This document shows, in pieces, positions 12,163 through 63,295 of a stretch of DNA of 64,000 nt (within the stretch, counting starts at the first letter, position 1; each line of letters begins with the position of its first letter). A program made the translations under genes and the position numbers. Location of the stretch: the IMG/VR virus record IMGVR_UViG_3300049855_000348, positions 124,001 through 188,000 of that record, one strand, 5' to 3'. Under the pieces are notes generated by a model that was given only the letters and a program-made list of their open reading frames with translations, was not told the origin of the DNA and searched no databases.

Positions 12163-12172
12163 GACTTACCTA
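12163..12172 (-). promoter_or_regulatory. Candidate late promoter TAGGTA-agtc-ATG of the giant fibre gene
   Basis: Same TANNTA + 4 nt + ATG geometry as upstream of 15751, 23218, 38020 and 63296. Confidence 0.5.
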
Positions 12173-12182
12173 CGAAGAAGAG

Positions 12183-12206
12183 CCCGGGGAGGCGGACCTC
12201 CCCGGG
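12183..12206 (-). terminator. GC-rich hairpin, probable intrinsic terminator
   Basis: Perfect 10-bp stem cccggggagg/cctccccggg with a 4-nt loop, just after the 12216 stop; weak pyrimidine tail (CTCTTCTT) on the minus strand. Confidence 0.7.
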
Positions 12207-12215
12207 TGTTTGAGG

Positions 12216-12608
12216 TCACTCGTCGTTCAGGCTGAGCAGCATCAGCAGTTCGATGGCGTACTTGGTCACCATGAACGCACCCTGCTTCAGGTAATAGCGC
12301 ATGCAGGCGCGGACGGCTTCTTTTTCCTTGTCGGTCCACTCGACCTCGACCTTGGGATCGCCCCACTTGTTCAGGCGGATCTCATGGGCACTGGCGAGTT
12401 CATCCTTGTCCGGCTTCGGACGATCCGGCAGTTCAGGGATGGCTTCGCAGGCGGCGAACGAGCGGCAGATCAACTGACCCTGCTTGGCTTCGTCCTTGTA
12501 CCACTGCGTGGTGGGAAGGATCTCGGCGAGGACGCTGGCTGCGCCTACGGAGATGGTGTACTTGGTCTTGGTCGGCGTTGCGACCTTGGCGGCTTCTTCG
12601 GTGCTCAC
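12216..12608 (-). CDS. Hypothetical protein (130 aa), possibly a fibre-associated chaperone
   Basis: ORF with codon usage typical of this genome, directly upstream of the fibre gene; function inferred from position only. Confidence 0.75.
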   Translation of the reverse strand: MSTEEAAKVATPTKTKYTISVGAASVLAEILPTTQWYKDEAKQGQLICRSFAACEAIPELPDRPKPDKDELASAHEIRLNKWGDPKVEVEWTDKEKEAVRACMRYYLKQGAFMVTKYAIELLMLLSLNDE

Positions 12609-12683
12609 GGTTTATAATCCCCGGTGGGCGGTGAAGGATCTACGTTGTTCGGATTGAGCTACGAGATCTCCTTCGGTGTGATC

Positions 12684-13133
12684 CTATGTAAGCCCTTGCC
12701 GGTATTTTGATGCCCACTTGTAGAGCTTGTTGGGCGAGTAGCGGCAGGGCTTGGCACCCTCCAGCAGGCCGATCTTCTTCAGGGTGGCTACGGCCAGTTC
12801 AGAACAGAACCATTTGGTCTTATTCTCACGGCTGATGCCGAGGACCTGAGCCATCCACAGACCGAACCAATCGTAGCCGGAGCCCATCTCCCCAAGGAGA
12901 AAAGACTTCACCTCTTCGAGTTGGGCATCGGTGAGGGGGATGTCGACCGTGGTCCAGCGGTCGGGATCGAGCAGCCGACCCAAGGCGAACTGCGTGACGC
13001 CTTGCTGATCATTGGCCTCGATGACGTTTCCGTGCTCGAACAGCATCCCGACGTGGAAGTACGGACCACCAGTCCACAGGCAGATCAGACGCTCGAAGAT
13101 GTTGTGCGGACGCTTCTGAAAGATGAGTTGCAT
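12684..13133 (-). CDS. Permuted papain-like (NlpC/P60, YiiX/YaeF C92-type) amidase/peptidase
   Basis: His precedes Cys: YFHVGML ... GSGYDWFGL ... WFCSELA ... SPNKLY, the signature of circularly permuted NlpC/P60 enzymes. Confidence 0.85.
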   Translation of the reverse strand: MQLIFQKRPHNIFERLICLWTGGPYFHVGMLFEHGNVIEANDQQGVTQFALGRLLDPDRWTTVDIPLTDAQLEEVKSFLLGEMGSGYDWFGLWMAQVLGISRENKTKWFCSELAVATLKKIGLLEGAKPCRYSPNKLYKWASKYRQGLT

Positions 13134-13145
13134 GCCCGATATTTA
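13134..13145 (-). promoter_or_regulatory. Candidate late promoter gcTAAATA-tcgggc-ATG
   Basis: TAAATA matches the 3' six bases of the T4 late consensus TATAAATA, 6 nt before the ATG at 13133; no SD sequence. Confidence 0.55.
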
Positions 13146-13158
13146 GCGGGCGAACTGC

Positions 13159-13617
13159 TCACTTACCGGCACGACGGTTCTTCACGGCGATCCGCAGGGC
13201 ATCACGGCTGCGAGTGTCGCCACGCTGACGCATCTGGGCGACCTCTTCGTCGATGCTCATGGTCTCAGGCTGGTACTCGTGGGTCGTGGCAGAAGCCTGG
13301 GCTTTCGCCACCTTGGCCGGCTTCGAGACGATGTCAGTTGTGTATCGTTCGACCTTCTTGGAACACTTGGGTGGCTTTACCTCCAAAGCGGTTTCGTCGC
13401 TGGTCTGGAAGTCGAAGGTCCGTTCGTGGAAATCCCGCAGGCGCTCATGCCGTTCAGCCGTGAGGGGGAGACCCATCAGGCTTTCGTGGTTGAGGGAGCG
13501 GGCTTCTTGGAGGAGGGTGACGAGGGCGGCAGAGGTGTAAAGCATTGGGCGGGAGCATGTCAGTGCTTCCGCGTTTTCAATACGGCCATTCCTGGGCAGT
13601 TTCAGACAGGATCTCAC
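13159..13617 (-). CDS. Hypothetical protein (up to 152 aa; start may be the ATG at 13545)
   Basis: Fills the gap in a minus-strand operon; carries head-protein-like xxE motifs (LLQE, LNHES). Confidence 0.65.
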   Translation of the reverse strand: MRSCLKLPRNGRIENAEALTCSRPMLYTSAALVTLLQEARSLNHESLMGLPLTAERHERLRDFHERTFDFQTSDETALEVKPPKCSKKVERYTTDIVSKPAKVAKAQASATTHEYQPETMSIDEEVAQMRQRGDTRSRDALRIAVKNRRAGK

Positions 13618-13640: not shown

Positions 13641-15602
13641 TCAGCCAAAGATGCCGATGTCGAGCTTCCTGGCCTGCTCAGTGATCACTTGGTCGACCGG
13701 GCAGAACCAGAGGTACTTGTCGTTGTCGGACAGGACACCGTCCATGGTCTTGGTGGTGTAGCCGTTGACGATGGGCTGCATGATCCCAGTGCCGGAGAGC
13801 GGGTAGCTGGGATCGTTGTAGGGAGCGTTGAGGTTGAGCGGGACCTTCTTGAAGCCGAACTTCTTGGCAAGCTGGTCCGAGGTGAAGGAGCGAGGTGGAT
13901 TGGCACCACCCAGCTTCACCTTCTGCGCATAGGTGACCCACCAGAGGTTCTTCACCCCGTGAGCCTTGGCAGTGAGTTTGACGGCATGCATGGCCCAGCG
14001 AGGGAATTTGTCGACGACCTCACGCATGGCGGCGATGTCTTTTTGCCACTCTTGGGTCTCGGAAGACTCTGGGTCTCTCCTGTCGATACGAGCCCGGGCT
14101 TCGGCTGCATCCTTGAGGTGATGGTCGGCTTGCTTCTGAGCTTCTGCGAGTTTTTCCTTCAGGTCGTTGATCATCGCTAAAACATCATTTGGTTTGAACC
14201 ACTCATTGGTTCTAGCATGCACGCCAACTTCATTCAGTGCTTTTCTTGCTGCGAGCATATCTGGAATGACATCCAGCAGATTTTTAGGAAGCGTTGGGTC
14301 ATTCGTTGGTTTGAAAGAGTCCCAGGTGATATGCAAAATATCACCGAGCAACTTCTGTCTTTCTACTTCCAAGGCTCTCCAGCCAGCATCGTTGGCTTTG
14401 ACAATTTCATACCACTTTTCAACGAGTGGTAGAGCCTTCTGAGAGTCACCAACGTTCGCCATGGTACGATGAGCGGCTTTGGTCGAATCGTCATGAGCAT
14501 GCTGATGAGTCAGGGCGTTGTACTTCATGTTGCCAACCTGTGGATGCTCCAGGTTGTCGACATCCTGCTGTAGTTCTTCGATCAGCCAGTTCTCAGCATT
14601 GAGCTTGTCGATGCGTACCCAGCCAAAGGGACGGCTGCCACGATGCACTGACTTGTGATTGCTCTTCCGCAGATCCTTCATGAAAGCGTAGAGCTTCGGA
14701 TGCTCTGTCTTCCATTTCTTCTCGACGCTGGCTGGTAGTCCAACAGAGACTAAGGCTGAATCAGCACCTTTACCACGGATCATCTGAGCGTTGTGGTAGG
14801 TGCCACGGAAATCTTTCACGTGGCTCGTGGCGAACTTATCCTTCGGAGCCTTCATGATCTCCTGGTACTTGTCGGCACGGAAGACCTTTGAGCCGTGTTC
14901 GTTCGGCGAGATGACGCCGACCTTCTCCATCTCACGGAGCATGGTATCGATGTCGGCCTTCGATTGAGTCTTCAGTTTGGGACGCAGCTTCTCCCAGGAC
15001 GTGTCGGCGGTCGGTACCTCGTCTGGCATCCACTTCTGCCAGTGCTCGGTCATGGTTGGTCTCAGACCGACTTCTTTGCCGGTCTTCTTGGTGATCAGAC
15101 CCTTTGCCGCAGCAGCCTGTGCCTTCTCGCGTCTGACCTGCTTGATCAGGTTCTGGGCTCGCTCAACAGCGGTGGCATCCCACGGCACACGGGTGAACTT
15201 GTATTTGCCATCGACCGTGGTTCTGACTTCACGCTCTGGATTCATTCCAGAAGCGATGGAACCCACTTCTCGAATGATACGTTGCTTGGACTGATTCTCC
15301 AAACGATCAAACAGACTCTGGTGAATATAGAGTTTACCATTCACATGATCGATCATGGCTGATTCAATCGAGCCGCTGATCTCCTCATTGCTGTATTTTC
15401 TGGTCAGAGCTTCGTATAGGTTATCCGGGAAGTCTCTGTCCGACTGAACGACCTTTCTTACAAAATCGTCAGCCTCTTCACCACTCATACCGGTGACCAG
15501 ATCATCCAACTCTGAAGCCGTCCAATCACCCCACTCGCCAGTTGAAACGGCGGTGCTGAGCTTGTTCTTGAGATTGGCCTCTTCAAAGATGGCGTTGAGC
15601 AT
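13641..15602 (-). CDS. Hypothetical 653-aa multi-domain probable virion protein with a W-L-I-E-E-L-Q-Q-D motif
   Basis: Long ORF coupled to the upstream ORF by a TGATG overlap. PFGWVRID...WLIEELQQD resembles the EE-x-Q-S-D motif I recognise from large uncharacterised phage polyvalent proteins. Confidence 0.75.
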   Translation of the reverse strand: MLNAIFEEANLKNKLSTAVSTGEWGDWTASELDDLVTGMSGEEADDFVRKVVQSDRDFPDNLYEALTRKYSNEEISGSIESAMIDHVNGKLYIHQSLFDRLENQSKQRIIREVGSIASGMNPEREVRTTVDGKYKFTRVPWDATAVERAQNLIKQVRREKAQAAAAKGLITKKTGKEVGLRPTMTEHWQKWMPDEVPTADTSWEKLRPKLKTQSKADIDTMLREMEKVGVISPNEHGSKVFRADKYQEIMKAPKDKFATSHVKDFRGTYHNAQMIRGKGADSALVSVGLPASVEKKWKTEHPKLYAFMKDLRKSNHKSVHRGSRPFGWVRIDKLNAENWLIEELQQDVDNLEHPQVGNMKYNALTHQHAHDDSTKAAHRTMANVGDSQKALPLVEKWYEIVKANDAGWRALEVERQKLLGDILHITWDSFKPTNDPTLPKNLLDVIPDMLAARKALNEVGVHARTNEWFKPNDVLAMINDLKEKLAEAQKQADHHLKDAAEARARIDRRDPESSETQEWQKDIAAMREVVDKFPRWAMHAVKLTAKAHGVKNLWWVTYAQKVKLGGANPPRSFTSDQLAKKFGFKKVPLNLNAPYNDPSYPLSGTGIMQPIVNGYTTKTMDGVLSDNDKYLWFCPVDQVITEQARKLDIGIFG

Positions 15603-15751
15603 CAGATCTTCTCGATGAAGTTCTTGGTCTTGTCGATCGCTTCAGCAGCCTTCGAGCGCAGGTACTTGCGGACCTGCCAGATGGCTGCCAGAGACAGGCA
15701 GATGCTCAAAATGTTGGCGATGATGCCAGTGATCACAAGGAGCGTGTTCAT
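15602..15751 (-). CDS. Small single-TM membrane protein (49 aa, MNTLLVITGIIANILSICLSLAAIWQVRKYLRSK...), not in ORF track
   Basis: ATG at 15751 preceded by TAACTA-agcc; hydrophobic N-terminal helix followed by basic residues; its TGA overlaps the ATG of the 653-aa gene. Confidence 0.75.
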   Translation of the reverse strand: MNTLLVITGIIANILSICLSLAAIWQVRKYLRSKAAEAIDKTKNFIEKI

Positions 15752-15778
15752 GGCTTAGTTAGCCGGGAAACAGGCACC

Positions 15779-15816
15779 AAAAAAGAAGCACCCCGAGTCT
15801 TTCGACCCGGGGTGCT
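15779..15816 (-). terminator. Rho-independent terminator after the major capsid gene
   Basis: Minus strand AGCACCCCGGGTC-GAAA-GACTCGGGGTGCT followed by TCTTTTTT. Confidence 0.9.
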
Positions 15817-15846
15817 CGCCTAACCTTCAGGCTGCCTGATCAGAGA

Positions 15847-17406
15847 TCAGAGCGAACCGCCGAAGATCGTTCCACCGACACCGCCACTGCTGAACAGGTT
15901 GCGGACGTTGAGGGTGGCGTAGTAATACTGGCCATCCTCGACGAGGTGCTTGGCGTAGCGGCTGAGCATCGCCTTGCGCGGGGTGAAGTCCTCGGGATCG
16001 AGGATCGCATCGGTCATCAGGACCGGCACGTACGGCGCGTGGATGTACGCCGCTTCCAGTTGGCTCTGCGGCTTGCGACCGATGAGGATCTTGTTCCGTG
16101 GGAACGAGGTCATCACGAAGACCGTGTAGCGGTCTTCCAGGGTGCCGGCCTTGTAGACGGCAGCATCCGAAGGAGCGATGCTTCCAGCGCCCTTCCAGGT
16201 GTTGACGTTGGCGAAGCGGGCAGCGATTTCCGGGCCGGTGACGATGAAGTTCGCCGGGCCACGGTTGGTGAAGCGGTGGATCTGAGCAGCGACATCGTTG
16301 ATGCCGTGGATCAGAGCGATGTTGCGGTCCTTGAAGTTGCCGCTGACACCACCGACGACGCCGGTACCACTGGTCGCGTAGTCGAACTCGAAGCGCAGAC
16401 CAGCGATGCGGAGCAGATCGTTGATACCTTCACGGTTCACGTTCTGCGCCATCAGGTTGGTCATGATGCCGGTGAGTTCTTCTTCGAGATCGATGTCATG
16501 GTACGCACGGAAGTCCATCTCGGCCTCGGGGGTCCAGATGGTCTTCAGCTTGCGGGTCTTGGCCTTCAGCATTTCGCTGTCCATGCCGACTTCGACTTCA
16601 GGAATCGACGAGTTCTTTTCCAGGTCGAAGCAGTAGTCGATGGCAGCGATCAGCGTGGTGGTCGCACCGACGGTGTAACCGGTCAGCCATGCAGCCGACG
16701 CGGTGATGGTCAGTTGGCTCGAACCGTTCAGGCCGACAGTCGGCTGGACGGACAGGGTGAGGCCGGTCAGTTCGTTGTAGACGATGCTGAACGTGCCGCC
16801 CTTGGATTCGACGACCGCCTTGACGGTGTTCGTGTCCTGGTCGATCAGGCTGATGCGAACCGGGGTGAACGTGCCGGGCAGGGCTGCCGGGCTGGCCAGC
16901 GAGGTGAAGTTCAACGCCAGGGTGTTGATGTTGGCGTTGGTGATCGTCGAGCCGGAAAGCTCGTACTGGATCGATTCACTGTCGTAGTATTGATCCGCGT
17001 TCCACAGGTTGAACTGGGGAGCCGCGAAGCCCTTGGGACGACCGAGTTCGATCGCGCTGTTGACACCCGCACGGAGGCGGTTCTGGGTCAGGCGCTGACG
17101 GAGGTAGAACACCAAGCCGGTCGGCTGGGGGATCGCCTGCACGTTGCAGATATCCGGGAGGATGATCTGTTCGCCCCATGCCTTGCGGATGGTCGGCAGA
17201 GCGGTGCGGGTGAACGCAGCGATGTTGCCGGAGACGGTGTCTTCGTTGATGTTGCGGACTTCGTTGTCCAGGAGGCGGGCGCAGAGACGGGTGCGGCTGG
17301 AGTCGAGACCTTCGCAGAGTCCCGCCCACTGTTCGGTGAGGGTTTCGACTTCGCGCTTGTCGCTTTCCAGATAGTCCGAAATTTCGGCTTCAGAGAGGCG
17401 TGGCAT
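15847..17406 (-). CDS. gp23: Major capsid protein, T4 gp23-like
   Basis: gp23-type motifs VQAIPQPTGLVFYLR, AKTRKLKTIWTPEAEMD, EINREGI-like NVNREGINDL, APYVP and PRKAMLSRY; last gene of the head module; strong SD (AAGGAAA). Confidence 0.95.
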   Translation of the reverse strand: MPRLSEAEISDYLESDKREVETLTEQWAGLCEGLDSSRTRLCARLLDNEVRNINEDTVSGNIAAFTRTALPTIRKAWGEQIILPDICNVQAIPQPTGLVFYLRQRLTQNRLRAGVNSAIELGRPKGFAAPQFNLWNADQYYDSESIQYELSGSTITNANINTLALNFTSLASPAALPGTFTPVRISLIDQDTNTVKAVVESKGGTFSIVYNELTGLTLSVQPTVGLNGSSQLTITASAAWLTGYTVGATTTLIAAIDYCFDLEKNSSIPEVEVGMDSEMLKAKTRKLKTIWTPEAEMDFRAYHDIDLEEELTGIMTNLMAQNVNREGINDLLRIAGLRFEFDYATSGTGVVGGVSGNFKDRNIALIHGINDVAAQIHRFTNRGPANFIVTGPEIAARFANVNTWKGAGSIAPSDAAVYKAGTLEDRYTVFVMTSFPRNKILIGRKPQSQLEAAYIHAPYVPVLMTDAILDPEDFTPRKAMLSRYAKHLVEDGQYYYATLNVRNLFSSGGVGGTIFGGSL

Positions 17407-17546
17407 GTGAGTGTTTCCTTAGAAACGGGGGTTGGTGCTTGGCATCGACACGATGCTTCGCGGCAGCTTTGGACCCCCCTTCACCTACGCGCCCCTCGCA
17501 TACACACAGGGGGCTGTTGAGGCCGGTGAAGACCCTCGCTGATGTC

Positions 17547-17552
17547 TATGTA
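17547..17552 (-). promoter_or_regulatory. Candidate late promoter TACATA for the capsid gene (leader about 140 nt)
   Basis: Same hexamer as upstream of 18396, 30974, 38020 and 41777; lies between the upstream terminator and the capsid gene. Confidence 0.5.
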
Positions 17553-17589
17553 GGGTTAGCGACAAAGACGACTTGATCATGCACCACAG

Positions 17590-17622
17590 AAACGAAGAAA
17601 CCCCGGGATTTCCCGGGGTTTC
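17590..17622 (-). terminator. Intrinsic terminator after the gp22-like gene
   Basis: GAAACCCCGGG-AAAT-CCCGGGGTTTC followed by TTCGTTTCT on the minus strand. Confidence 0.85.
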
Positions 17623-17646
17623 GCTCGAATCCTGATCGGCTCAGGC

Positions 17647-18396
17647 TTACTTCTTGATGCCGGCCAGACGGCGCATGCGTTCCATCTGGGGGCTGAAGCC
17701 CTTCTGGGTGCCCTGTTCGCCCTCGGCGATGACCTTCTCACCCTTGCCGGTGGAGTCGAGGTGTTCCTCGTTGGCGGACGTGCCCTTGGTCGGGGCGGTC
17801 TCTTCGACGGTGACCTGGAGGCTGGTTTCCAGGCTCTCGCGGAGTTCCTTGACCGTGCCTTCGGCGACGTTGGCACGGGCGGTCTGCTCCAGGACCTTCT
17901 TCTTCTCGCCCTTGATCTGCTCTTCGAGGGCGGCGACCTTGGTCTTGAGGTCCGTGACTTCCTTCGGATCGACCTTGGCACCTTCGGTGATCTCGGCCTT
18001 GCCCTTGGTGATCAGCTTCTCGACCTCTTCGAGGAGAGCCGAGCCGCGCTTGGCTTCGGTCTGCTCGGCGATGCGGGCGAGACGGTCACCATGGCTGTCG
18101 ATGGCGGAGACCAGGAGACCCTTCACGCGCTCGGCGAGAAGTTTCTCGTACTTGGTCAGTTCCTCCTTGATCGTCTTGTCGCCAGCTTCCTTGGCTTCTT
18201 CCAGCTTCTCCAGGTAGGAGGCTTCGAGCTTGATCTTCTCGGCCTTGACGGCTTCGGTGATCGCACCCTTCTTGCTGGCTTCGGCTTCGGCGACGGTCTT
18301 GGTGTAGAACGCCTCCAGCGACTCGACCACCTTGGTCGACTCGTCGGCACCGATGGTCTCGGTCAGGAGCTTCTTGAGATCGGCTGGGACGGGCAT
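17647..18396 (-). CDS. Prohead core/scaffold protein, gp22-like
   Basis: Charged coiled-coil protein between the protease and capsid genes (T4 order 21-22-23); many [LIV]xE motifs; TACATA and an AGAAGGA SD upstream. Confidence 0.75.
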   Translation of the reverse strand: MPVPADLKKLLTETIGADESTKVVESLEAFYTKTVAEAEASKKGAITEAVKAEKIKLEASYLEKLEEAKEAGDKTIKEELTKYEKLLAERVKGLLVSAIDSHGDRLARIAEQTEAKRGSALLEEVEKLITKGKAEITEGAKVDPKEVTDLKTKVAALEEQIKGEKKKVLEQTARANVAEGTVKELRESLETSLQVTVEETAPTKGTSANEEHLDSTGKGEKVIAEGEQGTQKGFSPQMERMRRLAGIKK

Positions 18397-18427
18397 GGGC
18401 TATTCCTTCTCGTGTTTATGTACGAGG

Positions 18428-19111
18428 TTACTTGATACCCAGCCAGCGATCGACGAGCGATGCCAAACCGAGCTTCTGAGTGGATGGGCGGGCTTTGGTG
18501 AACTCGCAGAACTCACGGATCAGTTGCTCACTGACCACTGAGGGGCGGGCACCTGGGGTGCTGGGGTCATGGACCAGATCGTAGGTCTTCATCGAGTAGT
18601 CTTCACCCACCATGGTGTCACCACCCTTGGTGAAGAGACTGCCGGCACCACGACTGGAAGTTCCGACCTTGCCACCCAGGGCATCGCAGCAGCCGATGGC
18701 AGCCGGGCCGAGGGGCAGTGACGGGATGAGCGTCATGCGTCCTTCGGTGATGCCGCTGGAGTTCATGTGCAGACGGTCGATCCGCAGACAGGTCTTCTGC
18801 ATGTTGATGTTGACCGTCTCGGGGTGATCGAGTTCCCCGAGGATGCCGCCGTTCTCTTTGATGATCTGCTGGAGCTTCTTGGTCTCACGCTCCAGGATGT
18901 GGAGCGGGTAGATGCGACCGTTCTTGTTGCGGGTGTTGGCCCGCTGGAACAGACCTTCGAGGACACGGGTGCCGCCCTCGCCGGCCTTCATCTCGCCCTC
19001 GAACAGGAAGGCTGCATGGCTTTCGCTGATGAGACCACGACGTGCTTCAAGAACGTCGTTCTCGTACGGCTTGACCTGCACCCATCCCTGTGATTCGAGG
19101 AGCGTCTTCAT
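18428..19111 (-). CDS. gp21: Prohead core protease, T4 gp21-like
   Basis: Motifs NKNGRIYP, GELDHP, SSRGAGSL and YDLVHDPSTPGA of gp21/S77 proteases. Confidence 0.95.
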   Translation of the reverse strand: MKTLLESQGWVQVKPYENDVLEARRGLISESHAAFLFEGEMKAGEGGTRVLEGLFQRANTRNKNGRIYPLHILERETKKLQQIIKENGGILGELDHPETVNINMQKTCLRIDRLHMNSSGITEGRMTLIPSLPLGPAAIGCCDALGGKVGTSSRGAGSLFTKGGDTMVGEDYSMKTYDLVHDPSTPGARPSVVSEQLIREFCEFTKARPSTQKLGLASLVDRWLGIK

Positions 19112-19113
19112 GA

Positions 19114-21003: not shown

Positions 21004-21030
21004 GGGTTGCCTCAGGGTTTATCTACGGAT

Positions 21031-23218: not shown

Positions 23219-23271
23219 GGCCTATCTAGCAGACCTCCTGAGGGTAACGATTTACGAGCATACATACTTCG

Positions 23272-25209: not shown

Positions 25210-25216
25210 GCCTAAT

Positions 25217-25525
25217 CTACCAGCAACACTCGGGAAGCGGGACTTTCTGTCCCTTGAGTTCGTGGAAGCAGTCGTCGAGGAAGTGAATCACACCATCGGT
25301 CAGGAAGATGTGACAGCGACTCTCTGGGCGAGATCCGTTTACCAACAATGACGGCGTGAAGGTTGGCTTCTCCATGTCGCCATTCCACTGCCAGACCGGT
25401 TCACGGCCTTTGATGCGGTAGGGATGGTGGCTCTTGCAGCCTGGGCAGTAAAAGACCAACGTGATGTCCTCGGCCTGCTCGTCGGTCGTGGCGTCTCCGC
25501 TATACAGCTTTTTGAGGACTGACAT
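25217..25525 (-). CDS. DUF6527-like small Cys/His protein (family often mislabelled 'ammonia monooxygenase')
   Basis: CPGCKSHH...WQWNGDMEKPTFTPSLLV...CHIFLTDGVIHFLDDCFHELKGQKVPLP matches the family pattern as I recall it. Confidence 0.7.
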   Translation of the reverse strand: MSVLKKLYSGDATTDEQAEDITLVFYCPGCKSHHPYRIKGREPVWQWNGDMEKPTFTPSLLVNGSRPESRCHIFLTDGVIHFLDDCFHELKGQKVPLPECCW

Positions 25526-30987: not shown

Positions 30988-32292
30988 TTATGTAGCGGCC
31001 TGGGAATCCGAGATCAGGTCTGCCAGCTTGGTCTTGATGAACTTGTTCGCCTCGACCAGGAAAGCATCCCACAGGGCACCACGGCCAGTATGGCGATCGG
31101 TCGGGACATTCTCGTCGTTGAGGTGCAGGGCGTAGAGGTCACCAGGGACACCCTCCTCCTCCAGGTGTCTGCGAACCCACTGCATCACTGCATCTTCGGT
31201 CACATCACCCTTGATTTCCTCCAGCGAGTGGATGGCTTGGGTGATCGGGTCGTGATTGGCGTCGGCGAAGAGATAACGACCGACCTGACCACGTACCCAG
31301 GCCGACAGGTAATTCAGGTCGCGGTAGTCTTCCAAGTGCTCACGGCTGTTGGCACCGTATTCCTCGATCGTGTCGGCGATCTCCTTGTCTACGTCGGCTG
31401 CCCGGCGATAGAGTTTGGCGACAACGTCCCTGTAGGCATCCCGCGTAACCGCTGTGCTGTCCGAGACTTTGCCCTGCTTGTCGAGTTTGCGAATGTCGAA
31501 ATCGTCGAAACGTCGAATGGCGTGTCGAAAGAAACGCTCGTAGTCCTTCTCGGTCGGCTGGTCACCGGCCTGGGCCAGGAAGTTGTTCAGGATCTGGCTG
31601 AAGGCTGGGTCCTGTTCAGCCGACTTGGCCATGCCTGCCACGACCTTCTCAGGTGCCTCCAGACGGCCACGGAAGAGCAACGGCAGGCTGTCGGTACCCA
31701 GCTTGTGGGCGATGCTCTGGACCTGCGCATGGCTCTCCCAGCGACCGGCCATCTTCAGCGCCTGTTCCTCGATCTCACCAGGGTCAGTGAGTAGGTCAGA
31801 GAGACCGGTTTCGGGCACCTCATACTTCACGCCGACCACGACCATCCTGGCCTTGGCATCGTCCTTGTGCAGGCGCGTTTCCGGGTTGCGGGTACCGATC
31901 TCCACCACGATCAGGGTACCAGGATCGACAGCATCGAGCTTGCCGGACTTGGTACGCTGGATGATCTGTTCAATCGGCTTGCGCAGATCCTTCTGGGTGA
32001 AGCCAATGGAGAAGCCGACGTTATCGTCATCGAGATGGTTGAGATCGACCTCGTAGCGACCAGACCAGAAGCGCCAGCAGTCCTCGGGATTGTTGGCGGT
32101 GTCCTTCTCCTTCGTGCGGTAGCACTTCAGCAAGGCACCACTGGAATGGGCAACGATCTCGACTTCCTGAGCGTGTAGGTAGCGGACCAGATCCTCACCG
32201 CCGTTGTGCTCGATGAAGTCTGACAGTGCCTTGAAGCGGGGCTCCATGGCTTGGGCGATGTCTTCACAGAGAATGCGTTTGTGGTGGATCAT
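30988..32292 (-). CDS. Hypothetical protein (434 aa)
   Basis: ATGA overlap with the upstream gene; typical codon usage. Confidence 0.8.
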   Translation of the reverse strand: MIHHKRILCEDIAQAMEPRFKALSDFIEHNGGEDLVRYLHAQEVEIVAHSSGALLKCYRTKEKDTANNPEDCWRFWSGRYEVDLNHLDDDNVGFSIGFTQKDLRKPIEQIIQRTKSGKLDAVDPGTLIVVEIGTRNPETRLHKDDAKARMVVVGVKYEVPETGLSDLLTDPGEIEEQALKMAGRWESHAQVQSIAHKLGTDSLPLLFRGRLEAPEKVVAGMAKSAEQDPAFSQILNNFLAQAGDQPTEKDYERFFRHAIRRFDDFDIRKLDKQGKVSDSTAVTRDAYRDVVAKLYRRAADVDKEIADTIEEYGANSREHLEDYRDLNYLSAWVRGQVGRYLFADANHDPITQAIHSLEEIKGDVTEDAVMQWVRRHLEEEGVPGDLYALHLNDENVPTDRHTGRGALWDAFLVEANKFIKTKLADLISDSQAAT

Positions 32293-37564: not shown

Positions 37565-37570
37565 GTCCAC

Positions 37571-37598
37571 AGTATAGCGACTAAAAGGTCGCTGTCAA
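37571..37598 (-). promoter_or_regulatory. Sigma70-type promoter TTGACA-16-TATACT with a perfect GCGAC-N6-GTCGC palindrome as its spacer
   Basis: Minus strand TTGACA GCGAC CTTTTA GTCGC TATACT gtggac ATG. Confidence 0.9.
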
Positions 37599-37950: not shown

Positions 37951-37956
37951 GCCCAG

Positions 37957-37984
37957 ATTATAGCGACACTTTAGTCTAAGTCAA
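37957..37984 (-). promoter_or_regulatory. Sigma70-type promoter TTGACT-16-TATAAT with a TAGAC-N6-GTCGC spacer
   Basis: Minus strand TTGACT TAGAC TAAAGT GTCGC TATAAT ctgggc ATG. Confidence 0.9.
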
Positions 37985-38019
37985 CACCTTCCTCAACACC
38001 GGTCATGGCTACATAAGCC

Positions 38020-41015: not shown

Positions 41016-41226
41016 TCACCGCTGCGACTTCTTCAGCTTTCAGCGATGGTGACGTGAGCGCACGGAAGTGTTCAGCCTTGAGGCGGATCTCATGTGCGAC
41101 ACGACGCAGTTCGGCTTGGGCCACACCTGCGCCGTGCCCGCCAGCCGCTACCTTCTCTCGATTCAAACGCTGGCTGTTGGCCAGGGTCACGAGATCGTCA
41201 AAGATGCGGATGGCGTCAGGAGTCAT
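40966..41226 (-). CDS. Small helical hypothetical protein (86 aa)
   Basis: TGATG overlap with the upstream gene. Confidence 0.7.
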   Translation of the reverse strand: MTPDAIRIFDDLVTLANSQRLNREKVAAGGHGAGVAQAELRRVAHEIRLKAEHFRALTSPSLKAEEVAAVNVEHERRWARRKGVSG

Positions 41227-41777: not shown

Positions 41778-41845
41778 GGCGTGTTTCTCCACGCCTATGT
41801 AGCTGGACGCAGCGAAAATCAGAGTCAGGAGGGCCAGGGTCCTGA

Positions 41846-44800: not shown

Positions 44801-45337
44801 GGCCTTGAATGGGGCGAACACGTCGGGACCGACAGCACCAGAGAAGGTGGTCTTGTAGCGGGTGTTCTGTACCGCACCGTTGATGCCGAGGTGACCGAAC
44901 ACGGTCATCTTGGCGGCACGCTCGGGGAACTGCCGGGCGAAGTCCTGCACGAAGGCGACGATCTTCGACTGGTCTTCGTAGTAGGGGATGAACAGGAAAT
45001 GATCACCTACCGGGGTGATCTCACGGAAGACCTTGATCTTCGGATGCATATCCAGTCCGTCGAGACTGCTGACGGAGGTAGAATGCTTGAGGTTGAGATC
45101 GTGGTTGCCCAGGGTGAGGAACACCGGCCACTTGTCGGCGAGCTTGCGAAAGAAGTTGATGGCAGCCGACTGGCTGACCACATCGACCGCTTCACGGGTA
45201 ACCAGGGCATCACCCATGCAGACGACGGCCTGCACGCCTTGTCGTTGGAACTCTTCAATGATCCAGTCGCCGGTTTTGATGATGCGATCCAGCCCCTGTG
45301 GCTGGAAGTGGATGTCAGAGAAGATTCCAAGTTGCAT
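41846..45337 (-). CDS. Fused Mre11/SbcD (gp47-like) nuclease + Rad50/SbcC (gp46-like) ATPase in one ORF
   Basis: Metallophosphoesterase motifs SDIH, MGD, GNHD, GH and GHFH, then Walker A GENGAGKS, coiled coil with CPTC hook, signature SGGQ, Walker B LDEVFDALD and VITH; no intervening stop. Start 45337 or 45340. Confidence 0.93.
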   Translation of the reverse strand: MQLGIFSDIHFQPQGLDRIIKTGDWIIEEFQRQGVQAVVCMGDALVTREAVDVVSQSAAINFFRKLADKWPVFLTLGNHDLNLKHSTSVSSLDGLDMHPKIKVFREITPVGDHFLFIPYYEDQSKIVAFVQDFARQFPERAAKMTVFGHLGINGAVQNTRYKTTFSGAVGPDVFAPFKATYSGHFHVFQRMDHRVTYCGSPLQFNFGDAGDQRGIMVLDMDTGNDRFILNPHHDAFKVLGVSDLPQDLTTLKDCFVTVIYDDLVTDEQHEALQLKLEAAGVISVRKESVIEKAIRDQEVEVLGVEATSAAGLVEPFVKSVITGDSQLDVDITIQFGKSIIAEVNSRFQDAEKGGMAFDGEVSSLTLEGFLGVKEKITINFDDLRPGVWYLEGENGAGKSTFLEAIFWCYFGETIRDEMKADDVVYDPQFTGKGKNCYVRVNHANGWSIERFRKYHDLGGTGVKVYKDGVYQESFEKGDPKATQKMIIDLIGIDRETYSRSYIMGQNVTANFMTGDEKKRRAMIEEMLGLERFDAYLEKTRELKKLMSDQLEQQANIQKVRAGEIERSAAQISAIETQILDAEKNHQVMLSSVAQRKNDHQVKMRQERERLMYAEASGEQTIQYSNDVVKAATEKVQLLSGGVEAIRVEAKANVDKAEETNKNIVRFQSLWNSRCIDHNNITNEENILKSEIGTVRDRITGLEAALKQEAAVVAANERANVLRQEATQKDQLAAAEGAKAEATTTQATPISQKAEKLSKLTTGGDCPTCLTSINGESMVNVVKGLNAELESLRAGYRTYKAEQTKLISEAQALRVQADESLKGLATLAQLAAAKTVLETLTKSLPDMEARLQAIAVRRQQVDARFAEQANQCLPMPERLEDIITASGFQRILDGLLAIMSAYRTKADLILASQAVTDLVSAKEALQKAQDEHKRLTGELSALLQEKSALEAGGAATEAALAQEERNLTATDPAAALKIAKDRLVADRQAAFAAMETSKAQAHALDLKSAYITFWDKAFAAKGSMRGFLLDQSVKQLNLVVQSYIGQHFGGKMTLTFNSDLTYQERYGRRSGGQRKWTDLAALFSIFELARQRSRHRAGFLALDEVFDALDVKGRRAVQDLIASMVNRVKRIFVITHADVPGSSRAGTIVATMVDEQTSWAIKPV

Positions 45338-45343
45338 CATCTC

Positions 45344-45371
45344 ATCCTAGCGACATTTTGGTCTAAGTCAA
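45344..45371 (-). promoter_or_regulatory. Sigma70-type promoter TTGACT-16-TAGGAT with a TAGAC-N6-GTCGC spacer
   Basis: Minus strand TTGACT TAGAC CAAAAT GTCGC TAGGAT gagATGATG; the second ATG is 6 nt from the -10 hexamer. Confidence 0.85.
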
Positions 45372-53905: not shown

Positions 53906-54523
53906 ATGCAAACGATCTACGACATCGAAACCATTGCCGTTCTCGATGCCAAGTCGATCAACCGTCGTTCCTTCCGATCTGGACCAGCCTCACGCATCCT
54001 TTCAATTTACGATGACCCTGAGATCCTACGGAAGCGACTTGAAGCGAATGTCCCCTGCCCGCTCAAAATGGCGATTGAAAAAAATGGTTACGATCCCGCC
54101 AATCCTCCGAAGTTGAAGCGCGGTCATTACATGGATCCGAAGGAGTTGTTCTACCGCACCATGAAAGTTCAGATGGCTGGTGGAATCGACAAAGCGGGTC
54201 GTGATGGAGAACGTTTCATCGAACTGCTGACCCTGCTGGCGAATGGTTATATGGGTCGCATCATGTTCAAGGATACCGGCTCGATGGCCAATCTCACTGA
54301 AGACATGGTGCAAGAAGCTATCACCAAGTGTGCGATGATCGTCATGCGCTTCAATCCCTGGGACCCCCGCGCCACCAAACCCACTCTCAATAACGCTTTC
54401 GCCTATTTCACCACGGTTATCCGCAATCGCTTCTATGAAACACTCACTTGCCCATTGGTCGGGTCGGATGTGTTCCTCGAAGATCTCAAAACCGAAAACC
54501 AGTCGATCGGTGATTTGATTTGA
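53906..54523 (+). CDS. gp55: Late-transcription sigma factor, T4 gp55-like
   Basis: HYMDPKEL...LANGY...F...EDMVQEAI...RFNP...AFAYFTTVIRNRF parallels gp55 (YVNNKEL...IAEG...NF...EMIADGI...NFD...PHAYIT); SD GAGGAAG. Confidence 0.8.
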   Translation: MQTIYDIETIAVLDAKSINRRSFRSGPASRILSIYDDPEILRKRLEANVPCPLKMAIEKNGYDPANPPKLKRGHYMDPKELFYRTMKVQMAGGIDKAGRDGERFIELLTLLANGYMGRIMFKDTGSMANLTEDMVQEAITKCAMIVMRFNPWDPRATKPTLNNAFAYFTTVIRNRFYETLTCPLVGSDVFLEDLKTENQSIGDLI

Positions 54524-61486: not shown

Positions 61487-61516
61487 GCCTAGAACCTAGC
61501 ATGGTTGGTGTGGAAT

Positions 61517-61566
61517 ACAATAGCGATCAAAATGTCGCTTGATTTTGAAGTCTGATTTGGTACACT
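61517..61566. promoter_or_regulatory. Divergent promoter pair around a GCGAT-N6-GTCGC site
   Basis: Leftward: palindrome followed by TATTGT (-10). Rightward: TTGATT (61539) -16- TACACT (61561) -6- ATG 61573, with the palindrome abutting its -35. Confidence 0.75.
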
Positions 61567-61572
61567 GCGGGC

Positions 61573-61683
61573 ATGTTCAAACTCCCCATCCTGGCAGTCC
61601 TCCTCATCGCCACCTTCGCCTGCGGTCTCTACGTGGGCCACAAGCTCGGCTTCGCCCACGCGCAGAAGATCCAGACCAAGTGA
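61573..61683 (+). CDS. 36-aa single-TM micro-protein (MFKLPILAVLLIATFACGLYVGHKLGFAHAQKIQTK), not in ORF track
   Basis: Leaderless geometry (6 nt after TACACT); GTGA overlap with the next gene; hydrophobic helix. Confidence 0.75.
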   Translation: MFKLPILAVLLIATFACGLYVGHKLGFAHAQKIQTK

Positions 61684-62069
61684 GTAAGCCGGTTCAGGTC
61701 TATGATGGCAATGGGTTATTCGATAACGAATACTTCATAGCCAAAGAGTCGACCAAGATCGTCCTCGAACTGAAGGGATTGTTGATCGCACTTGAACGAT
61801 ATGCCAAGATGGGTGTTCGCAGAAAAGACGTTCACGGACACGATCTCGAACCACTGGATCCGGAAGAAATCTCACAAATTATAGAAAGCGCCAAAGCGGT
61901 TTATGATTGGCTGAATGATTTTGAACCTTACGAACTAGCGGCACCCGTCATTTATAGACTCGGCTTCCTTGCTGGGGAGTGTGTGAAGAAAGGATTCAAT
62001 CCGTTTGCAGCCCAACTCCATCAGCTTGTCGGCGGAATGAGTAAGATCCATGAATCACGCCGTCATTGA
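61680..62069 (+). CDS. Hypothetical protein (129 aa, MSKPVQVYDGNG...)
   Basis: GTG start overlapping the micro-protein stop; first of three genes sharing an N-terminal motif. Confidence 0.75.
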   Translation: MSKPVQVYDGNGLFDNEYFIAKESTKIVLELKGLLIALERYAKMGVRRKDVHGHDLEPLDPEEISQIIESAKAVYDWLNDFEPYELAAPVIYRLGFLAGECVKKGFNPFAAQLHQLVGGMSKIHESRRH

Positions 62070-62472
62070 TGTCGTTCAAGTCTACGAGGGTGACGGTGTC
62101 AAACCGCCACGACGGAAAATCGTACGTCCTCCGAAGCCGTTCGAGAACGAAGGGAAGTTTCGGATCACCATCAATGATATCACGTTCATCATCAACTATA
62201 AGGTCCAAGAGTTCAAACAACATGGTGTGGTGACGAGTCAAAACGTTGCTGTGACCGGTTGCGGTTTTGGCGGAGTCTTCACCTCCAGTGATCTCAAATT
62301 ACAGGAACCGGTGAAGATCAGACAGGTCATGGTCGGCAAACAAAAAGTGCAGACCTACCTGTGGGATCTCGATGTTCTCATGATCACACGTATGACGCTT
62401 GAACGCTTCGGCGATCACCTCGCCAAGCATGCAGCCCACAAGAAAAAATACTACAAGAAGAGGACATGGTGA
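62050..62472 (+). CDS. Hypothetical protein (140 aa, ...VQVYEGDG...)
   Basis: Operon-coupled; shared N-terminal motif. Confidence 0.75.
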   Translation: MNHAVIDVVQVYEGDGVKPPRRKIVRPPKPFENEGKFRITINDITFIINYKVQEFKQHGVVTSQNVAVTGCGFGGVFTSSDLKLQEPVKIRQVMVGKQKVQTYLWDLDVLMITRMTLERFGDHLAKHAAHKKKYYKKRTW

Positions 62473-63167
62473 TGGAGATCCAGTGCTATGATGGTGATGG
62501 AGTTGAGCCATTATACGTTCGTCAGAAACGCGAAGCCGAGGAGGCTCGCTATCGCAGGCGTGTTGAGCAGGTTGGTCTGCGTCTGGCAAATCGTGAGCGC
62601 CGTGAACGCCATCGTTCAGAGCGTCAGAAGGCCAAGCCCATCGTTCGTTGTGAACGATTCGAGATGCGACGTGTCGGCAACAAGACCCATTTCCACATCA
62701 AGTCGACTGATCACCCAACCAAGCTGATCTTCTTCGCCGGTGACCATTTCAGGGAGATGACCTTTCGTTACCCTTCCTACGATGATGTCAGAGACCCCAT
62801 GCGGATGCCGGTGGTCCTCAGGGCTGTCAACGTGAAGGTCCTCCAGATGCATGCCGTCGAACCCATGGGTTCTGACGATGACACTCCGTTGTTCTATGAG
62901 ACTTCGATCACCATCGAATCAGACACCCTCATCAACGAGTCGGCCAAGGTTTACAAAGCCTTCCGAGACTCTATCTGTCTCCCCATTCCAACCCTGAAGG
63001 GCACTCATGGCTCAATACAGCCTGGGCAAGTGGCGTCATCCGAAGACCGAGCAGATTCGGATCTACCTCAACGGCCTCGACAGCACCGAGCAAAAGGTGT
63101 GGTTCGAGAGGGGGGAGCGAAAAAACGACCAGCTTCCGCCCGAGTTCGGCATCAAGCTGTGTTGTGA
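62472..63167 (+). CDS. Hypothetical protein (MEIQCYDGDG...); the last 54 or so residues overlap the next gene
   Basis: TGATG overlap at the start; shared N-terminal motif; 161-nt 3' overlap is suspicious. Confidence 0.65.
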   Translation: MEIQCYDGDGVEPLYVRQKREAEEARYRRRVEQVGLRLANRERRERHRSERQKAKPIVRCERFEMRRVGNKTHFHIKSTDHPTKLIFFAGDHFREMTFRYPSYDDVRDPMRMPVVLRAVNVKVLQMHAVEPMGSDDDTPLFYETSITIESDTLINESAKVYKAFRDSICLPIPTLKGTHGSIQPGQVASSEDRADSDLPQRPRQHRAKGVVREGGAKKRPASARVRHQAVL

Positions 63168-63288
63168 AAACACGGTAACGCTGACCAAGCAGGAGGTTGT
63201 GGAGGAGATCGCCGAGGCGTTCTCCGAGATGGACCTCTTCCTCGACAAGACCACCTGGAGCCGCCTGGGAAGGGCTGCTAGCTGGTAA
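63007..63288 (+). CDS. Hypothetical protein (93 aa)
   Basis: GAAGGG SD; typical codon usage. Confidence 0.75.
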   Translation: MAQYSLGKWRHPKTEQIRIYLNGLDSTEQKVWFERGERKNDQLPPEFGIKLCCENTVTLTKQEVVEEIAEAFSEMDLFLDKTTWSRLGRAASW

Positions 63289-63295
63289 CTAAGTC

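What the first reader, a model, noticed from the sequence alone, without database searches (positions are those of the whole stretch)
12163..63295. A late-promoter grammar, TANNTA-RGNC-ATG, giving apparently leaderless late mRNAs
The same geometry of hexamer, exactly 4 nt, then ATG precedes the fibre gene (TAGGTA-agtc, 12163-12172), the 49-aa TM gene (TAACTA-agcc, 15752-15761), the 71-aa gene before portal (TAGATA-ggcc, 23219-23228), the capsid-mimic gene (TACATA-agcc, 38010-38019), the 63296 gene (TAACTA-agtc) and terminase (TAGATT-aggc). With longer leaders it precedes 13133 (TAAATA, +6), gp23 (TACATA 17547), gp22 (TACATA 18417), the 629-aa scaffold (TAGATA 21020), 30974 and 41777. Established: T4 gp55 recognises TATAAATA, and a gp55-like gene is in this window. 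Inference: a relaxed gp55 promoter with +1 at or near the start codon. The hits at 25209 and 63296 overlap upstream stop codons and are weaker.
Basis: partly seen in the sequence, partly recalled or inferred. Interest (0 to 1): 0.62.

Follow-up and report, generated by a model that had tools for sequence, protein, structure and literature searches.

The report
Late promoters abutting start codons
An uncultured 220-kb T4-like phage marks its late genes with a short box (TAGATA, TACATA or TAACTA) that in about two dozen genes sits exactly 4-5 bases before the start codon, so these messages probably begin at the AUG with no ribosome-binding leader; the same is true of its early, host-type promoters.

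Summary
In the 220,489-bp genome, TANNTA is followed by ATG at exactly 4 nt 19 times and at 5 nt 11 times. Other offsets give 0-4, and simulated genomes give about 3. The box is not any TANNTA. An unbiased hexamer test picks TAGATA, TACATA and TAACTA, with consensus gcTAGATAR. Nineteen of 21 TAGATA copies lie within 45 nt upstream of a gene on the same strand.

The same boxes, with 14-41-nt Shine-Dalgarno leaders or a 140-nt leader, precede the capsid, scaffold, sheath and tube genes. They are conserved at those places in six relatives of 48-68% GC. Several sit just after terminators. The gp55-like protein is confirmed by fold: its best PDB match is T4 gp55, Z 10.2.

The leaderless reading fits the geometry and a C(-1)A(+1) bias.

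No 5' ends could be mapped, because only metatranscriptome contigs were available. No clamp or gp33 homologue was found.

Verdict: a new variant of known kinds, T4 late promoters and the leaderless transcripts of Thermus phages.

The parts
12163..12172 (-). TAGGTA-agtc directly before the ATG (12162) of the 3994-aa fibre gene. Non-core hexamer, short (d=4) geometry, 10 nt after a terminator-like hairpin.
12183..12206 (-). Terminator-like hairpin (10-bp stem plus CTCTTCTTCG) just upstream of the fibre hexamer.
13134..13145 (-). cgcTAAATA-tcgggc before ATG 13133 (149-aa gene). Spacing is 6 and the discriminator resembles the early class. Ambiguous or hybrid site.
15752..15761 (-). TAACTA-agcc before ATG 15751 (49-aa membrane-like gene). 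Core hexamer, d=4, in a 95-nt intergenic gap.
15786..15817 (-). Strong terminator-like hairpin (14-bp stem plus T-run) after the capsid gene, about 25 nt upstream of the TAACTA box.
17547..17552 (-). TACATA box 140 nt upstream of the major capsid ATG (17406). The hexamer is the only invariant block in the alignment of seven phages. The RNA contig 17228-17526 ends about 15 nt short of the start predicted from this box.
17597..17622 (-). Terminator-like hairpin after the gp22-like gene, about 45 nt upstream of the capsid TACATA box.
18417..18422 (-). TACATA box 20 nt before ATG 18396 (249-aa gp22-like gene), with a GAAGGA Shine-Dalgarno in the leader.
21020..21025 (-). TAGATA box 16 nt before ATG 21003 (629-aa scaffold-like gene), GAGG in the leader. 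A TAGATA or TACATA box precedes the orthologue in all six relatives.
23219..23228 (-). ctgcTAGATA-ggcc before ATG 23218 (71-aa gene ahead of portal). Core hexamer, d=4. The orthologues in L015 and L016 keep TAGATA and ATGGATCT but with 7 nt between.
25210..25219 (-). TAGATT-aggc before the terminase ATG 25209. One-mismatch variant. Two of 19 genomic TAGATT copies have this geometry.
30989..30994 (-). TACATA box 14 nt before ATG 30974 (458-aa gene), AGAGG in the leader. Overlaps the stop of the upstream gene.
38010..38019 (+). tggcTACATA-agcc before ATG 38020 (58-aa gene). Core hexamer, d=4, divergent from an early-class promoter 59 nt away.
41796..41801 (-). TACATA 18 nt before an ATG (41777) that is in frame inside the 207-aa ORF 41226-41849. 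Weak candidate.
63286..63295 (+). TAACTA-agtc before ATG 63296 (165-aa gene). Its first TAA is the stop of the upstream gene, so this site is weaker.
53906..54523 (+). gp55-like late sigma factor (205 aa), the proposed reader of the box.
37951..37962 (-). Early-class promoter: TTGACTTAGAC...GTCGC-TATAAT-ctgggc, then ATG 37950. The -10 box lies exactly 6 nt from the ATG.
37565..37576 (-). Early-class promoter: TTGACAGCGAC...GTCGC-TATACT-gtggac, then ATG 37564. The -10 box lies exactly 6 nt from the ATG.
45338..45349 (-). Early-class promoter: TTGACTTAGAC...GTCGC-TAGGAT before the SbcCD-fusion gene. ATGs lie at 3 nt (45340) and 6 nt (45337).

Best explanation
The hexamer is the -10-like core of this phage's late promoters. 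Its consensus is gcTAGATAR, with TACATA and TAACTA as common variants and TAGATT, TAGGTA and TAAATA as rarer ones. It works like the T4 late box TATAAATA. It has no -35 element and lies in front of virion genes. It is most likely read by host RNA polymerase carrying the phage's own gp55-like sigma (window 53906-54523).

The promoters come in two layouts.
- In about 15 the box is 8-41 nt from the start codon (140 nt for the capsid gene), and the leader carries a GAGG-type Shine-Dalgarno.
- In about 23 the box is exactly 4 nt (or 5 nt) from an ATG, rarely a GTG. Transcription starting 5-6 nt after the box then begins at the A of the start codon, giving a leaderless mRNA. In orthologues with 7-nt spacing the leader would be 1-2 nt.

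The phage's early, host-sigma-type promoters (TTGAC-N17-TATACT) use the same trick: the -10 box lies exactly 6 nt before ATG in 20 genes. Leaderless expression is therefore a general habit of this phage, and by implication its host translates such messages well.

Shown here: the motif, its spacing statistics, its position relative to genes and terminators, its conservation, and the sigma-like fold. Inferred: that it is a promoter, that gp55 reads it, and that +1 is the A of the AUG.
For: Spacing:
- 19 copies at d=4 and 11 at d=5, against about 3 in controls.
- Profile of the three core hexamers relative to called starts: 12 at d=4, 5 at d=5, then singletons from 8 to 41.

Placement:
- 19 of 21 TAGATA and 7 of 8 TAACTA copies lie within 45 nt upstream of a same-strand start. 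The null is 2.8%, p 6e-28.
- Seven short sites serve divergent genes that have no upstream same-strand gene.
- Three window boxes follow predicted intrinsic terminators.

Late genes:
- The boxes precede the capsid, scaffold-like and gp22-like genes and the fibre, and the sheath, tube and a tape-measure-like gene.
- The other promoter class precedes the SbcCD fusion and many small unknown genes.

No -35: nothing is conserved upstream beyond G-2 and C-1.

Conservation:
- In six relatives (capsid 72-77% identical, GC 48-68%), 27 of 46 TAGATA/TACATA copies lie within 45 nt upstream of called starts, against 2.6% by chance (p 4e-31).
- In the 68%-GC relative, all six TAGATA/TACATA copies lie directly upstream of genes: four within 31 nt of the start, one at 5 nt, and one about 126 nt before the capsid gene.
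- The hexamer is the only invariant block upstream of the capsid gene in seven phages.
- Short geometry recurs in relatives: L016 TACATA-ggcc-ATG and TAAATA-aacc-ATG, L013 TAAATA-aggg-ATG, L015 TAACTA-caggc-ATG, L014 TACATA-ccacc-GTG.

Start point:
- C at -1 of the start codon in 35 of 40 leaderless-type genes against 111 of 228 others (Fisher p 4e-6). This fits the pyrimidine(-1)/purine(+1) preference of RNA polymerase.
- Only 3 of 23 short genes have a downstream in-frame start with a Shine-Dalgarno.
- In T4 P23, TATAAATA spans -13..-6 (PMC7892883).

Early-class analogy: TTGAC-N16-18-TANNNT is followed by ATG at exactly 6 nt in 20 of 36 copies, and other offsets give 0-2. This is the spacing reported for leaderless genes in Deinococcus-Thermus (PMC12340547).

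Sigma: phrog_234 hit; best PDB match T4 gp55, then sigma region-2 domains.

RNA: a sediment metatranscriptome holds identical contigs. One at depth 9 covers the capsid 5' part and 120 nt of leader and stops at 17526. The next contig upstream (17555-17772) has depth 2.6. The break brackets the TACATA box.
Against: - No 5' end is mapped. Contigs cannot show starts, and the RNA library may hold DNA.
- By the strict T4 P23 rule (5 nt between box and +1), the dominant d=4 class would start at the U of the AUG, so a one-base shift has to be assumed.
- Three or four short sites use GTG, which is a poor leaderless start in E. coli.
- Six of the 23 short sites overlap an upstream stop codon and could be plain gene junctions.
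- One TAGATA (genome 102,731) lies in the loop of a terminator-like hairpin, and two lie inside early-promoter spacers.
- The consensus shares only TA..TA with TATAAATA.
- The gp55-like assignment rests on a partial profile hit and a model of mean pLDDT 71. No sequence hit to T4 gp55 was found in the PDB.
- No clamp or gp33 homologue was found.
- In relatives, most boxes have long leaders.
Confidence: 0.6

Rival explanations
1. The short pattern is a gene-junction effect rather than a promoter. In a compact genome, a TAA or TAG stop followed by a few bases and the next ATG (termination-reinitiation coupling) produces TA-R-NNN-ATG. The second TA would then be incidental.
For: In every d=4 site with a purine after the box, TAR is an in-frame stop one codon before the ATG. 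Six of 23 short sites overlap the real stop codon of the upstream gene, and they include most of the non-core hexamers (TAGCTA twice, TAAGTA). Stop-N2-5-ATG junctions are common in this genome.
Against: Among all TA-N4-ATG occurrences, the upstream TA is still five-fold enriched, and only at spacing 2. Sixteen of 23 sites lie in true gaps of 0-198 nt, and seven of them serve divergent genes. The same three hexamers occur with 14-140-nt leaders before late genes and are conserved in relatives.
Confidence: 0.1
2. The boxes are promoters, but they are read by a host sigma factor or another phage factor rather than by the gp55-like protein. They would be a -35-less -10 element of the TANNNT kind that drives leaderless genes in Deinococcus-Thermus.
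For: The -10-adjacent-to-ORF layout is a known host-type pattern (PMC12340547). The phage's own early class shows that the host polymerase makes such transcripts. The gp55 link is by homology only, and no clamp or gp33 was found.
Against: The box ends in TA, not T. It sits 4-5 nt rather than 6 nt from the ATG. It lacks the TTGAC and GTCGC context of the host-type class. It is confined to virion-gene modules. Two sharply distinct consensus sequences imply two specificities, and a gp55-like sigma is the only candidate found.
Confidence: 0.15
3. The boxes are promoters, but transcription starts after the ATG, or the box marks an RNA-processing site. The adjacent ATG would then not be a 5'-terminal start codon, and translation would begin elsewhere or from processed ends.
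For: If TAGATAAG is aligned on TATAAATA in the register that keeps A-12 and A-8, +1 falls just past the ATG (reasoning). The strict T4 spacing puts +1 at the U for d=4. Nothing here separates primary from processed ends.
Against: The sharp coupling of box and ATG at 4-5 nt would be unexplained. The ORFs open at that ATG with an in-frame stop just upstream, and few have a downstream Shine-Dalgarno start. The ATG and N-terminus are conserved in orthologues of the pre-portal gene. There is a C(-1)A(+1) bias.
Confidence: 0.1

Closest known systems
Bacteriophage T4 late promoters (TATAAATA, gp55/gp33/gp45)
   Same: A single short A/T-rich -10-like box with no -35 element, placed directly before virion genes and often between closely packed genes. 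A gp55-like sigma region-2 protein is encoded. The box-to-start distance is within one base of T4 P23 (PMC2988020, PMC7892883).
   Different: The consensus is TAGATA, TACATA or TAACTA with a conserved GC just upstream, instead of TATAAATA. About half the promoters abut the start codon, whereas T4 late mRNAs, to my knowledge, carry Shine-Dalgarno leaders. The clamp and gp33 were not identified here.
Leaderless transcripts of Thermus phages phiYS40 and Lalka27a
   Same: Phage transcripts, including late ones, start at the A or G of the initiator codon from class-specific -10 boxes without a -35. Lalka27a late promoters have TAGGGT (bioRxiv 10.64898/2026.04.20.719267; phiYS40 as summarised in PMC3594737).
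   Different: Those are thermophile phages unrelated to the T4 lineage, and their starts were mapped by experiment. Here the phage is a mesophilic-habitat metagenomic genome of the T4 superfamily, the factor is gp55-like, and the starts are inferred.
-10 motif adjacent to ORFs in Deinococcus-Thermus (TANNNT 6-7 bp before the start codon)
   Same: The phage's early class (TTGAC-N17-TATACT-N6-ATG) matches this layout exactly. The late class follows the same logic (PMC12340547).
   Different: The late box is TANNTA at 4-5 nt, lacks a -35, and is presumably read by a phage sigma. The host is unknown.
Poxvirus late promoters (TAAATG initiator overlapping the start codon)
   Same: A late-class viral promoter whose initiator overlaps the ATG, so the coding region starts at the 5' end. 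This is from my own knowledge and was not tested here.
   Different: A eukaryotic cytoplasmic virus with its own polymerase and poly(A) heads. This is an analogy only.

Membership tests
T4-type (gp55-dependent) late promoter | Single -10-like element with no conserved -35 element | tested here: met
   Position table of 23 short and 17 long sites: nothing is conserved upstream except G-2 and C-1.
T4-type (gp55-dependent) late promoter | Consensus TATAAATA | tested here: not met
   The enriched hexamers are TAGATA, TACATA and TAACTA. TAAATA occurs at only 1-2 sites here and 2 in relatives.
T4-type (gp55-dependent) late promoter | Phage encodes a gp55 homologue | tested here: met
   phrog_234 at E 3.7e-6 and 2.8e-7. 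The model's best PDB match is 7d7c_F (T4 gp55), Z 10.2, rmsd 2.4 A, 94 residues, followed by sigma region-2 domains. There is no sequence-level PDB hit.
T4-type (gp55-dependent) late promoter | Phage encodes the gp45 sliding clamp and the gp33 co-activator | tested here: inconclusive
   phrog_223, PF02916 and PF09116 find nothing in the genome. A clamp-loader-like gene is present (phrog_168, E 4e-6). Its 260-aa neighbour has no relatives and no usable model. gp33 was not searched by profile.
T4-type (gp55-dependent) late promoter | Located before late (virion) genes | tested here: met
   The capsid, scaffold-like, gp22-like, fibre, sheath, tube and tape-measure-like genes all carry the box.
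T4-type (gp55-dependent) late promoter | Transcription starts about 6 nt downstream of the box and depends on gp55 | not testable with these tools
   Only contigs of one metatranscriptome were available.
Leaderless mRNA | The 5' end of the primary transcript is the A (or G) of the start codon | not testable with these tools
   Contigs cannot show 5' ends. The geometry and the C(-1)A(+1) bias are indirect.
Leaderless mRNA | Promoter -10 element at a fixed short distance from the start codon, with no room for a Shine-Dalgarno | tested here: met
   Late class: 4-5 nt in 23 called genes. Early class: 6 nt in 20 copies.
Leaderless mRNA | Strong preference for AUG as start codon | tested here: inconclusive
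   Late short class 20 ATG and 3 GTG; early class 17 of 17 ATG; the rest of the genome about 81% ATG.

The most novel reading that the evidence does not exclude
A whole clade of uncultured T4-superfamily jumbo phages from soil and freshwater (capsid identity 72-93%, GC 48-68%) runs both its early (host sigma) and late (gp55-like sigma) programmes largely on leaderless mRNAs. Its gp55 relative has been re-specified from TATAAATA to TAGATA, with the start point one base closer. This would imply either a host lineage with very efficient 70S-type leaderless initiation or phage reprogramming of initiation, as proposed for phiYS40.
Probability: 0.45. Interest if true: 0.62.

Novelty: new variant of a known kind. 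Interest (0 to 1): 0.52.

Why it matters
- It gives a concrete, testable promoter code for a divergent branch of T4-like phages: two classes, with positions for about 40 late and about 36 early sites.
- It fixes many start codons that gene callers would otherwise misplace.
- It shows that a gp55-type sigma can have drifted to a different -10 word, which is useful for understanding how region-2-only sigmas read DNA.
- It extends the leaderless late transcripts of phages, so far mapped in Thermus phages, to the T4 superfamily.
- The layout hints at the biology of the unknown host, namely efficient leaderless translation.

Tried and rejected
- Near-identical or annotated relatives in the phage collection: none by DNA. 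By protein, the capsid reaches at most 31% identity to any deposited phage. The gp55-like protein gives no tblastn match.
- Sequence-only link of the gp55-like protein to solved structures: none, either as a single sequence or as a 21-member profile. Plain Foldseek gave only weak rows (E 0.5 or more; T4 gp55 at rank 6). The re-alignment settled it.
- Sliding clamp: PF02916, PF09116 and phrog_223 found nothing. PF13177 also found nothing. The 260-aa neighbour of the clamp-loader-like gene has no homologues and no informative Atlas neighbours. Left open.
- RNA evidence: the only RNA run is stored as contigs. Nothing was listed for molecule starts (table 6). Contig boundaries near the capsid box are consistent with a start there but are not proof.
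- General TANNTA as the motif: rejected. Twelve of the 15 observed TANNTA hexamers are at or near background upstream of genes.
- RGNC as a promoter-specific word: only partly. C at -1 is common genome-wide.
- Phage-encoded initiator tRNA as a leaderless helper: the single tRNA-Met(CAT) has a paired 1-72 end and no GGG/CCC anticodon stem, so it looks like an elongator or Ile2 type.
- Two contigs of close relatives (P0030, P0033) could not be fetched.
- Two family scans failed on mistyped coordinates and were corrected.

Full report
**What the window is**

The window is bases 124,001-188,000 of a single 220,489-bp virus record with direct terminal repeats. It is rated complete and has 56% GC. 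It comes from a freshwater-sediment metagenome.

Profile searches show a very distant member of the T4 superfamily:
- major capsid protein of the gp23 family at 15847-17406 (minus strand)
- prohead protease at 18428-19111
- portal at 21031-23010
- large terminase at 23272-25209
- a fused SbcC/SbcD (gp46/47) at 41846-45340
- helicase, primase, UvsX-like and UvsY-like genes.

No deposited phage is close. There is no DNA match, and the capsid is at most 31% identical to any. I made my own gene calls with a codon-usage score: 268 genes covering 90% of the genome.

**Check of the observation**

The geometry is far beyond chance.
- Over the whole genome and both strands, TANNTA is followed by ATG at exactly 4 nt 19 times and at 5 nt 11 times. 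Every other offset from 0 to 15 gives 0-4.
- Forty third-order Markov genomes give 2.65 +/- 2.06 and 3.5 +/- 1.6.
- Because TA plus a purine is a stop codon and stop-spacer-ATG junctions are common in compact genomes, I also conditioned on TA-N4-ATG (174 cases). A second TA at spacing 2 is seen 19 times against 3.6 expected, and spacings 0-8 otherwise give 2-8. For N5 the figures are 11 against 2.8.

**What the motif really is**

Unbiased k-mer enrichment in the 50 nt upstream of all genes gives two families.

It is narrower than TANNTA.
- TAGATA has 21 copies in the genome, and 19 lie within 45 nt upstream of a same-strand gene start (null 2.8%, p 6e-28).
- TAACTA gives 7 of 8 and TACATA 8 of 18.
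- The other TANNTA hexamers are at or near background.
- A test of all hexamers at positions -10..-5 and -11..-6 of called starts ranks TAGATA, TACATA and TAACTA first.
- Aligned sites give G-2, C-1, TA[G/A/C][A/C]TA, then R. In the short class G, Y, C and ATG follow. Nothing is conserved further upstream, so there is no -35.

Relative to called starts, the three core hexamers end 4 nt upstream in 12 genes and 5 nt upstream in 5. Otherwise they occur as singletons between 8 and 41 nt. With rarer variants there are 23 short sites and about 15 true long-leader sites. The long leaders carry GAGG-type Shine-Dalgarno sequences.

Two of the 17 long hits are TAGATA copies inside early-promoter spacers, and one lies in a terminator-like loop, so not every copy is a site. 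Six short sites overlap the stop codon of the upstream gene and are weaker. The other 16-17 lie in real gaps, and seven of them serve divergent genes.

**Why it is most likely a late promoter**

- Function of the genes: every recognisable gene behind the box is a virion gene. These are the capsid (140-nt leader), the scaffold-like 629-aa gene, the gp22-like gene, the fibre, the tail sheath, the tail tube and a tape-measure-like protein. The other motif family precedes the SbcCD fusion and many small unknown genes.
- Terminators: in the window, three boxes sit just downstream of predicted intrinsic terminators on the same strand (15817-15786, 12206-12183 and 17622-17597). New transcription has to start there.
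- Conservation:
  - I fetched six contigs of relatives whose capsid is 72-77% identical and whose GC runs from 48 to 68%. Of 46 TAGATA/TACATA copies in them, 27 lie within 45 nt upstream of a called same-strand start, against 2.6% expected.
  - In the 68%-GC contig all six copies lie directly upstream of genes, including the scaffold, gp22-like, capsid and sheath genes.
  - Upstream of the capsid gene the hexamer is the only invariant block in seven phages.
  - For the small gene before portal, both TAGATA and the first codons ATGGATCT are invariant, while the spacing is 4 nt here and 7 nt in two relatives.
- The factor:
  - The 205-aa protein at 53906-54523 hits the PHROG of T4 gp55 and has 26 metagenomic homologues.
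  - The best match of its AlphaFold model (mean pLDDT 71; the core at 80-94) is T4 gp55 in the open complex: 7d7c_F, Z 10.2, rmsd 2.4 A over 94 residues. The following rows are almost all sigma region-2 domains.
- RNA:
  - A sediment metatranscriptome holds identical contigs of this phage.
  - One contig at depth 9 runs from inside the capsid gene to 17526, so the leader is at least 120 nt.
  - The next contig upstream (17555-17772, spanning the terminator) has depth 2.6.
  - The break brackets the TACATA box at 17552-17547. This fits a start there, but contigs cannot prove one.

**The leaderless reading**

In T4 P23 the box TATAAATA spans -13..-6. The adenines at -12, -9 and -8 are flipped into gp55 pockets, and the probe sequence shows TATAAATA-CTCCT-G, so 5 nt separate the box from +1 (PMC7892883; PMC2988020).

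If TAGATA is aligned with the last six bases of the T4 box, a 5-nt spacing puts +1 exactly on the A of the ATG. The commoner 4-nt spacing is one base short. Start-site choice by RNA polymerase is flexible by a base and prefers pyrimidine(-1)/purine(+1).

In line with that, C precedes the start codon in 35 of 40 leaderless-type genes against 111 of 228 others (p 4e-6). The ORFs open at that ATG with an in-frame stop one codon upstream. Only 3 of 23 have a downstream in-frame start with a Shine-Dalgarno.

It reads gtGTTGAC(T/A)TAGAC-N-GGTCGC-TATACT-ctgGGC-ATG.
- This is a sigma70-type promoter. TTGAC-N16-18-TANNNT is followed by ATG at exactly 6 nt in 20 of its 36 copies, and other offsets give 0-2.
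- Six nucleotides is the canonical discriminator length. It is also the spacing reported for leaderless genes in Deinococcus-Thermus (PMC12340547).
- A relative shows the same layout (L015).

Both temporal classes of this phage therefore come in a leaderless form and a Shine-Dalgarno form.

**What remains inferred**

- No primary 5' end has been seen.
- That gp55 reads the box rests on homology and on the lack of another candidate.
- The T4 partners gp45 and gp33 were not found by profile searches. A clamp-loader-like gene exists at genome 79,751-80,710.
- The rival readings are listed with their tests: gene-junction artefact, host-sigma promoter, and a start downstream of the ATG or a processing site. 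Together I give them about 0.35.

**Comparison with what is known**

The system works like T4 late promoters, but it fails the defining consensus (TATAAATA) and adds the leaderless layout.

Leaderless phage transcripts, including late ones from class-specific -10 boxes, have been mapped in Thermus phages phiYS40 and Lalka27a. The idea is therefore not new. Its occurrence in the T4 superfamily with a gp55-type sigma and a TAGATA word is new. A full-text search found no report of such a motif. I rate it a new variant of a known kind, of moderate interest.

**Limits**

- The gene calls are my own heuristic.
- Statistics that depend on called starts inherit its errors.
- The pattern-only counts do not.

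Noticed in passing
window 37951-37962, 37565-37576, 45338-45349 (minus); genome-wide about 36 copies: A second, very uniform promoter family: GTTGAC(T/A)TAGAC-N-GGTCGC-TATACT-ctgGGC. It is sigma70-like. Its -10 box lies exactly 6 nt before ATG in 20 copies and 24-33 nt (with a Shine-Dalgarno) in others. Presumably these are early promoters giving leaderless early mRNAs.
   Followed up: yes
window 17407-17546 (minus) and alignment A2: The capsid gene has a 130-140-nt leader in all seven phages compared. A conserved GC-rich segment (about CTCAACGTCGCCCnGTGTGT...GGC) lies 30-60 nt after the box. It may be a 5' stem-loop for stability or regulation.
   Followed up: partly
genome 91,413-91,448 and 204,602-204,613 (L006:11413-11448; L009:16602-16613): Back-to-back leaderless-type genes. 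In one pair the divergent ATGs are 34 bp apart with two hexamers (TAACTA on one strand, TAGTTA on the other). In another a single TATCTA/TAGATA hexamer is flanked by an ATG 4 nt away on one strand and 5 nt away on the other.
   Followed up: partly
genome 102,731 (L007:2726-2731, minus): One TAGATA copy sits in the loop of a terminator-like hairpin (cccgctggc-TAGATA-ggccagcggg plus a T-run) between the tail tube gene and the next gene. It may be a chance copy or a combined terminator and promoter.
   Followed up: no
genome 18.5-23 kb and 39.9-40.8 kb (L002, L003, L004): Thirty-one tRNA genes in two clusters. The single tRNA-Met(CAT) looks like an elongator or Ile2 type, not an initiator.
   Followed up: partly
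window 41846-45340 (minus): SbcD-like (gp47) and SbcC-like (gp46) domains are fused in one 1164-aa protein. In T4 they are separate genes.
   Followed up: no
It follows a terminator-like hairpin and a non-core TAGGTA box. Two further ATGs lie within the first 8 codons.
   Followed up: no
L013:11698-21548: In one relative the capsid gene is followed by a run of genes, many with ART-PolyVal domains. This block is absent from the window's genome at that place.
   Followed up: no
window 15500-21100 in run X3: A freshwater metagenome holds a strain 95-99% identical. Its differences cluster in the 3' part of the 49-aa gene (15620-15649), while the TAACTA box and the first codons are unchanged.
   Followed up: partly
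genome 79,751-80,710 (L019): A clamp-loader-like AAA+ gene behind an early-class promoter with a 33-nt leader. The adjacent 260-aa gene (78,968-79,750) has no detectable relatives and could be a very divergent clamp.
   Followed up: partly
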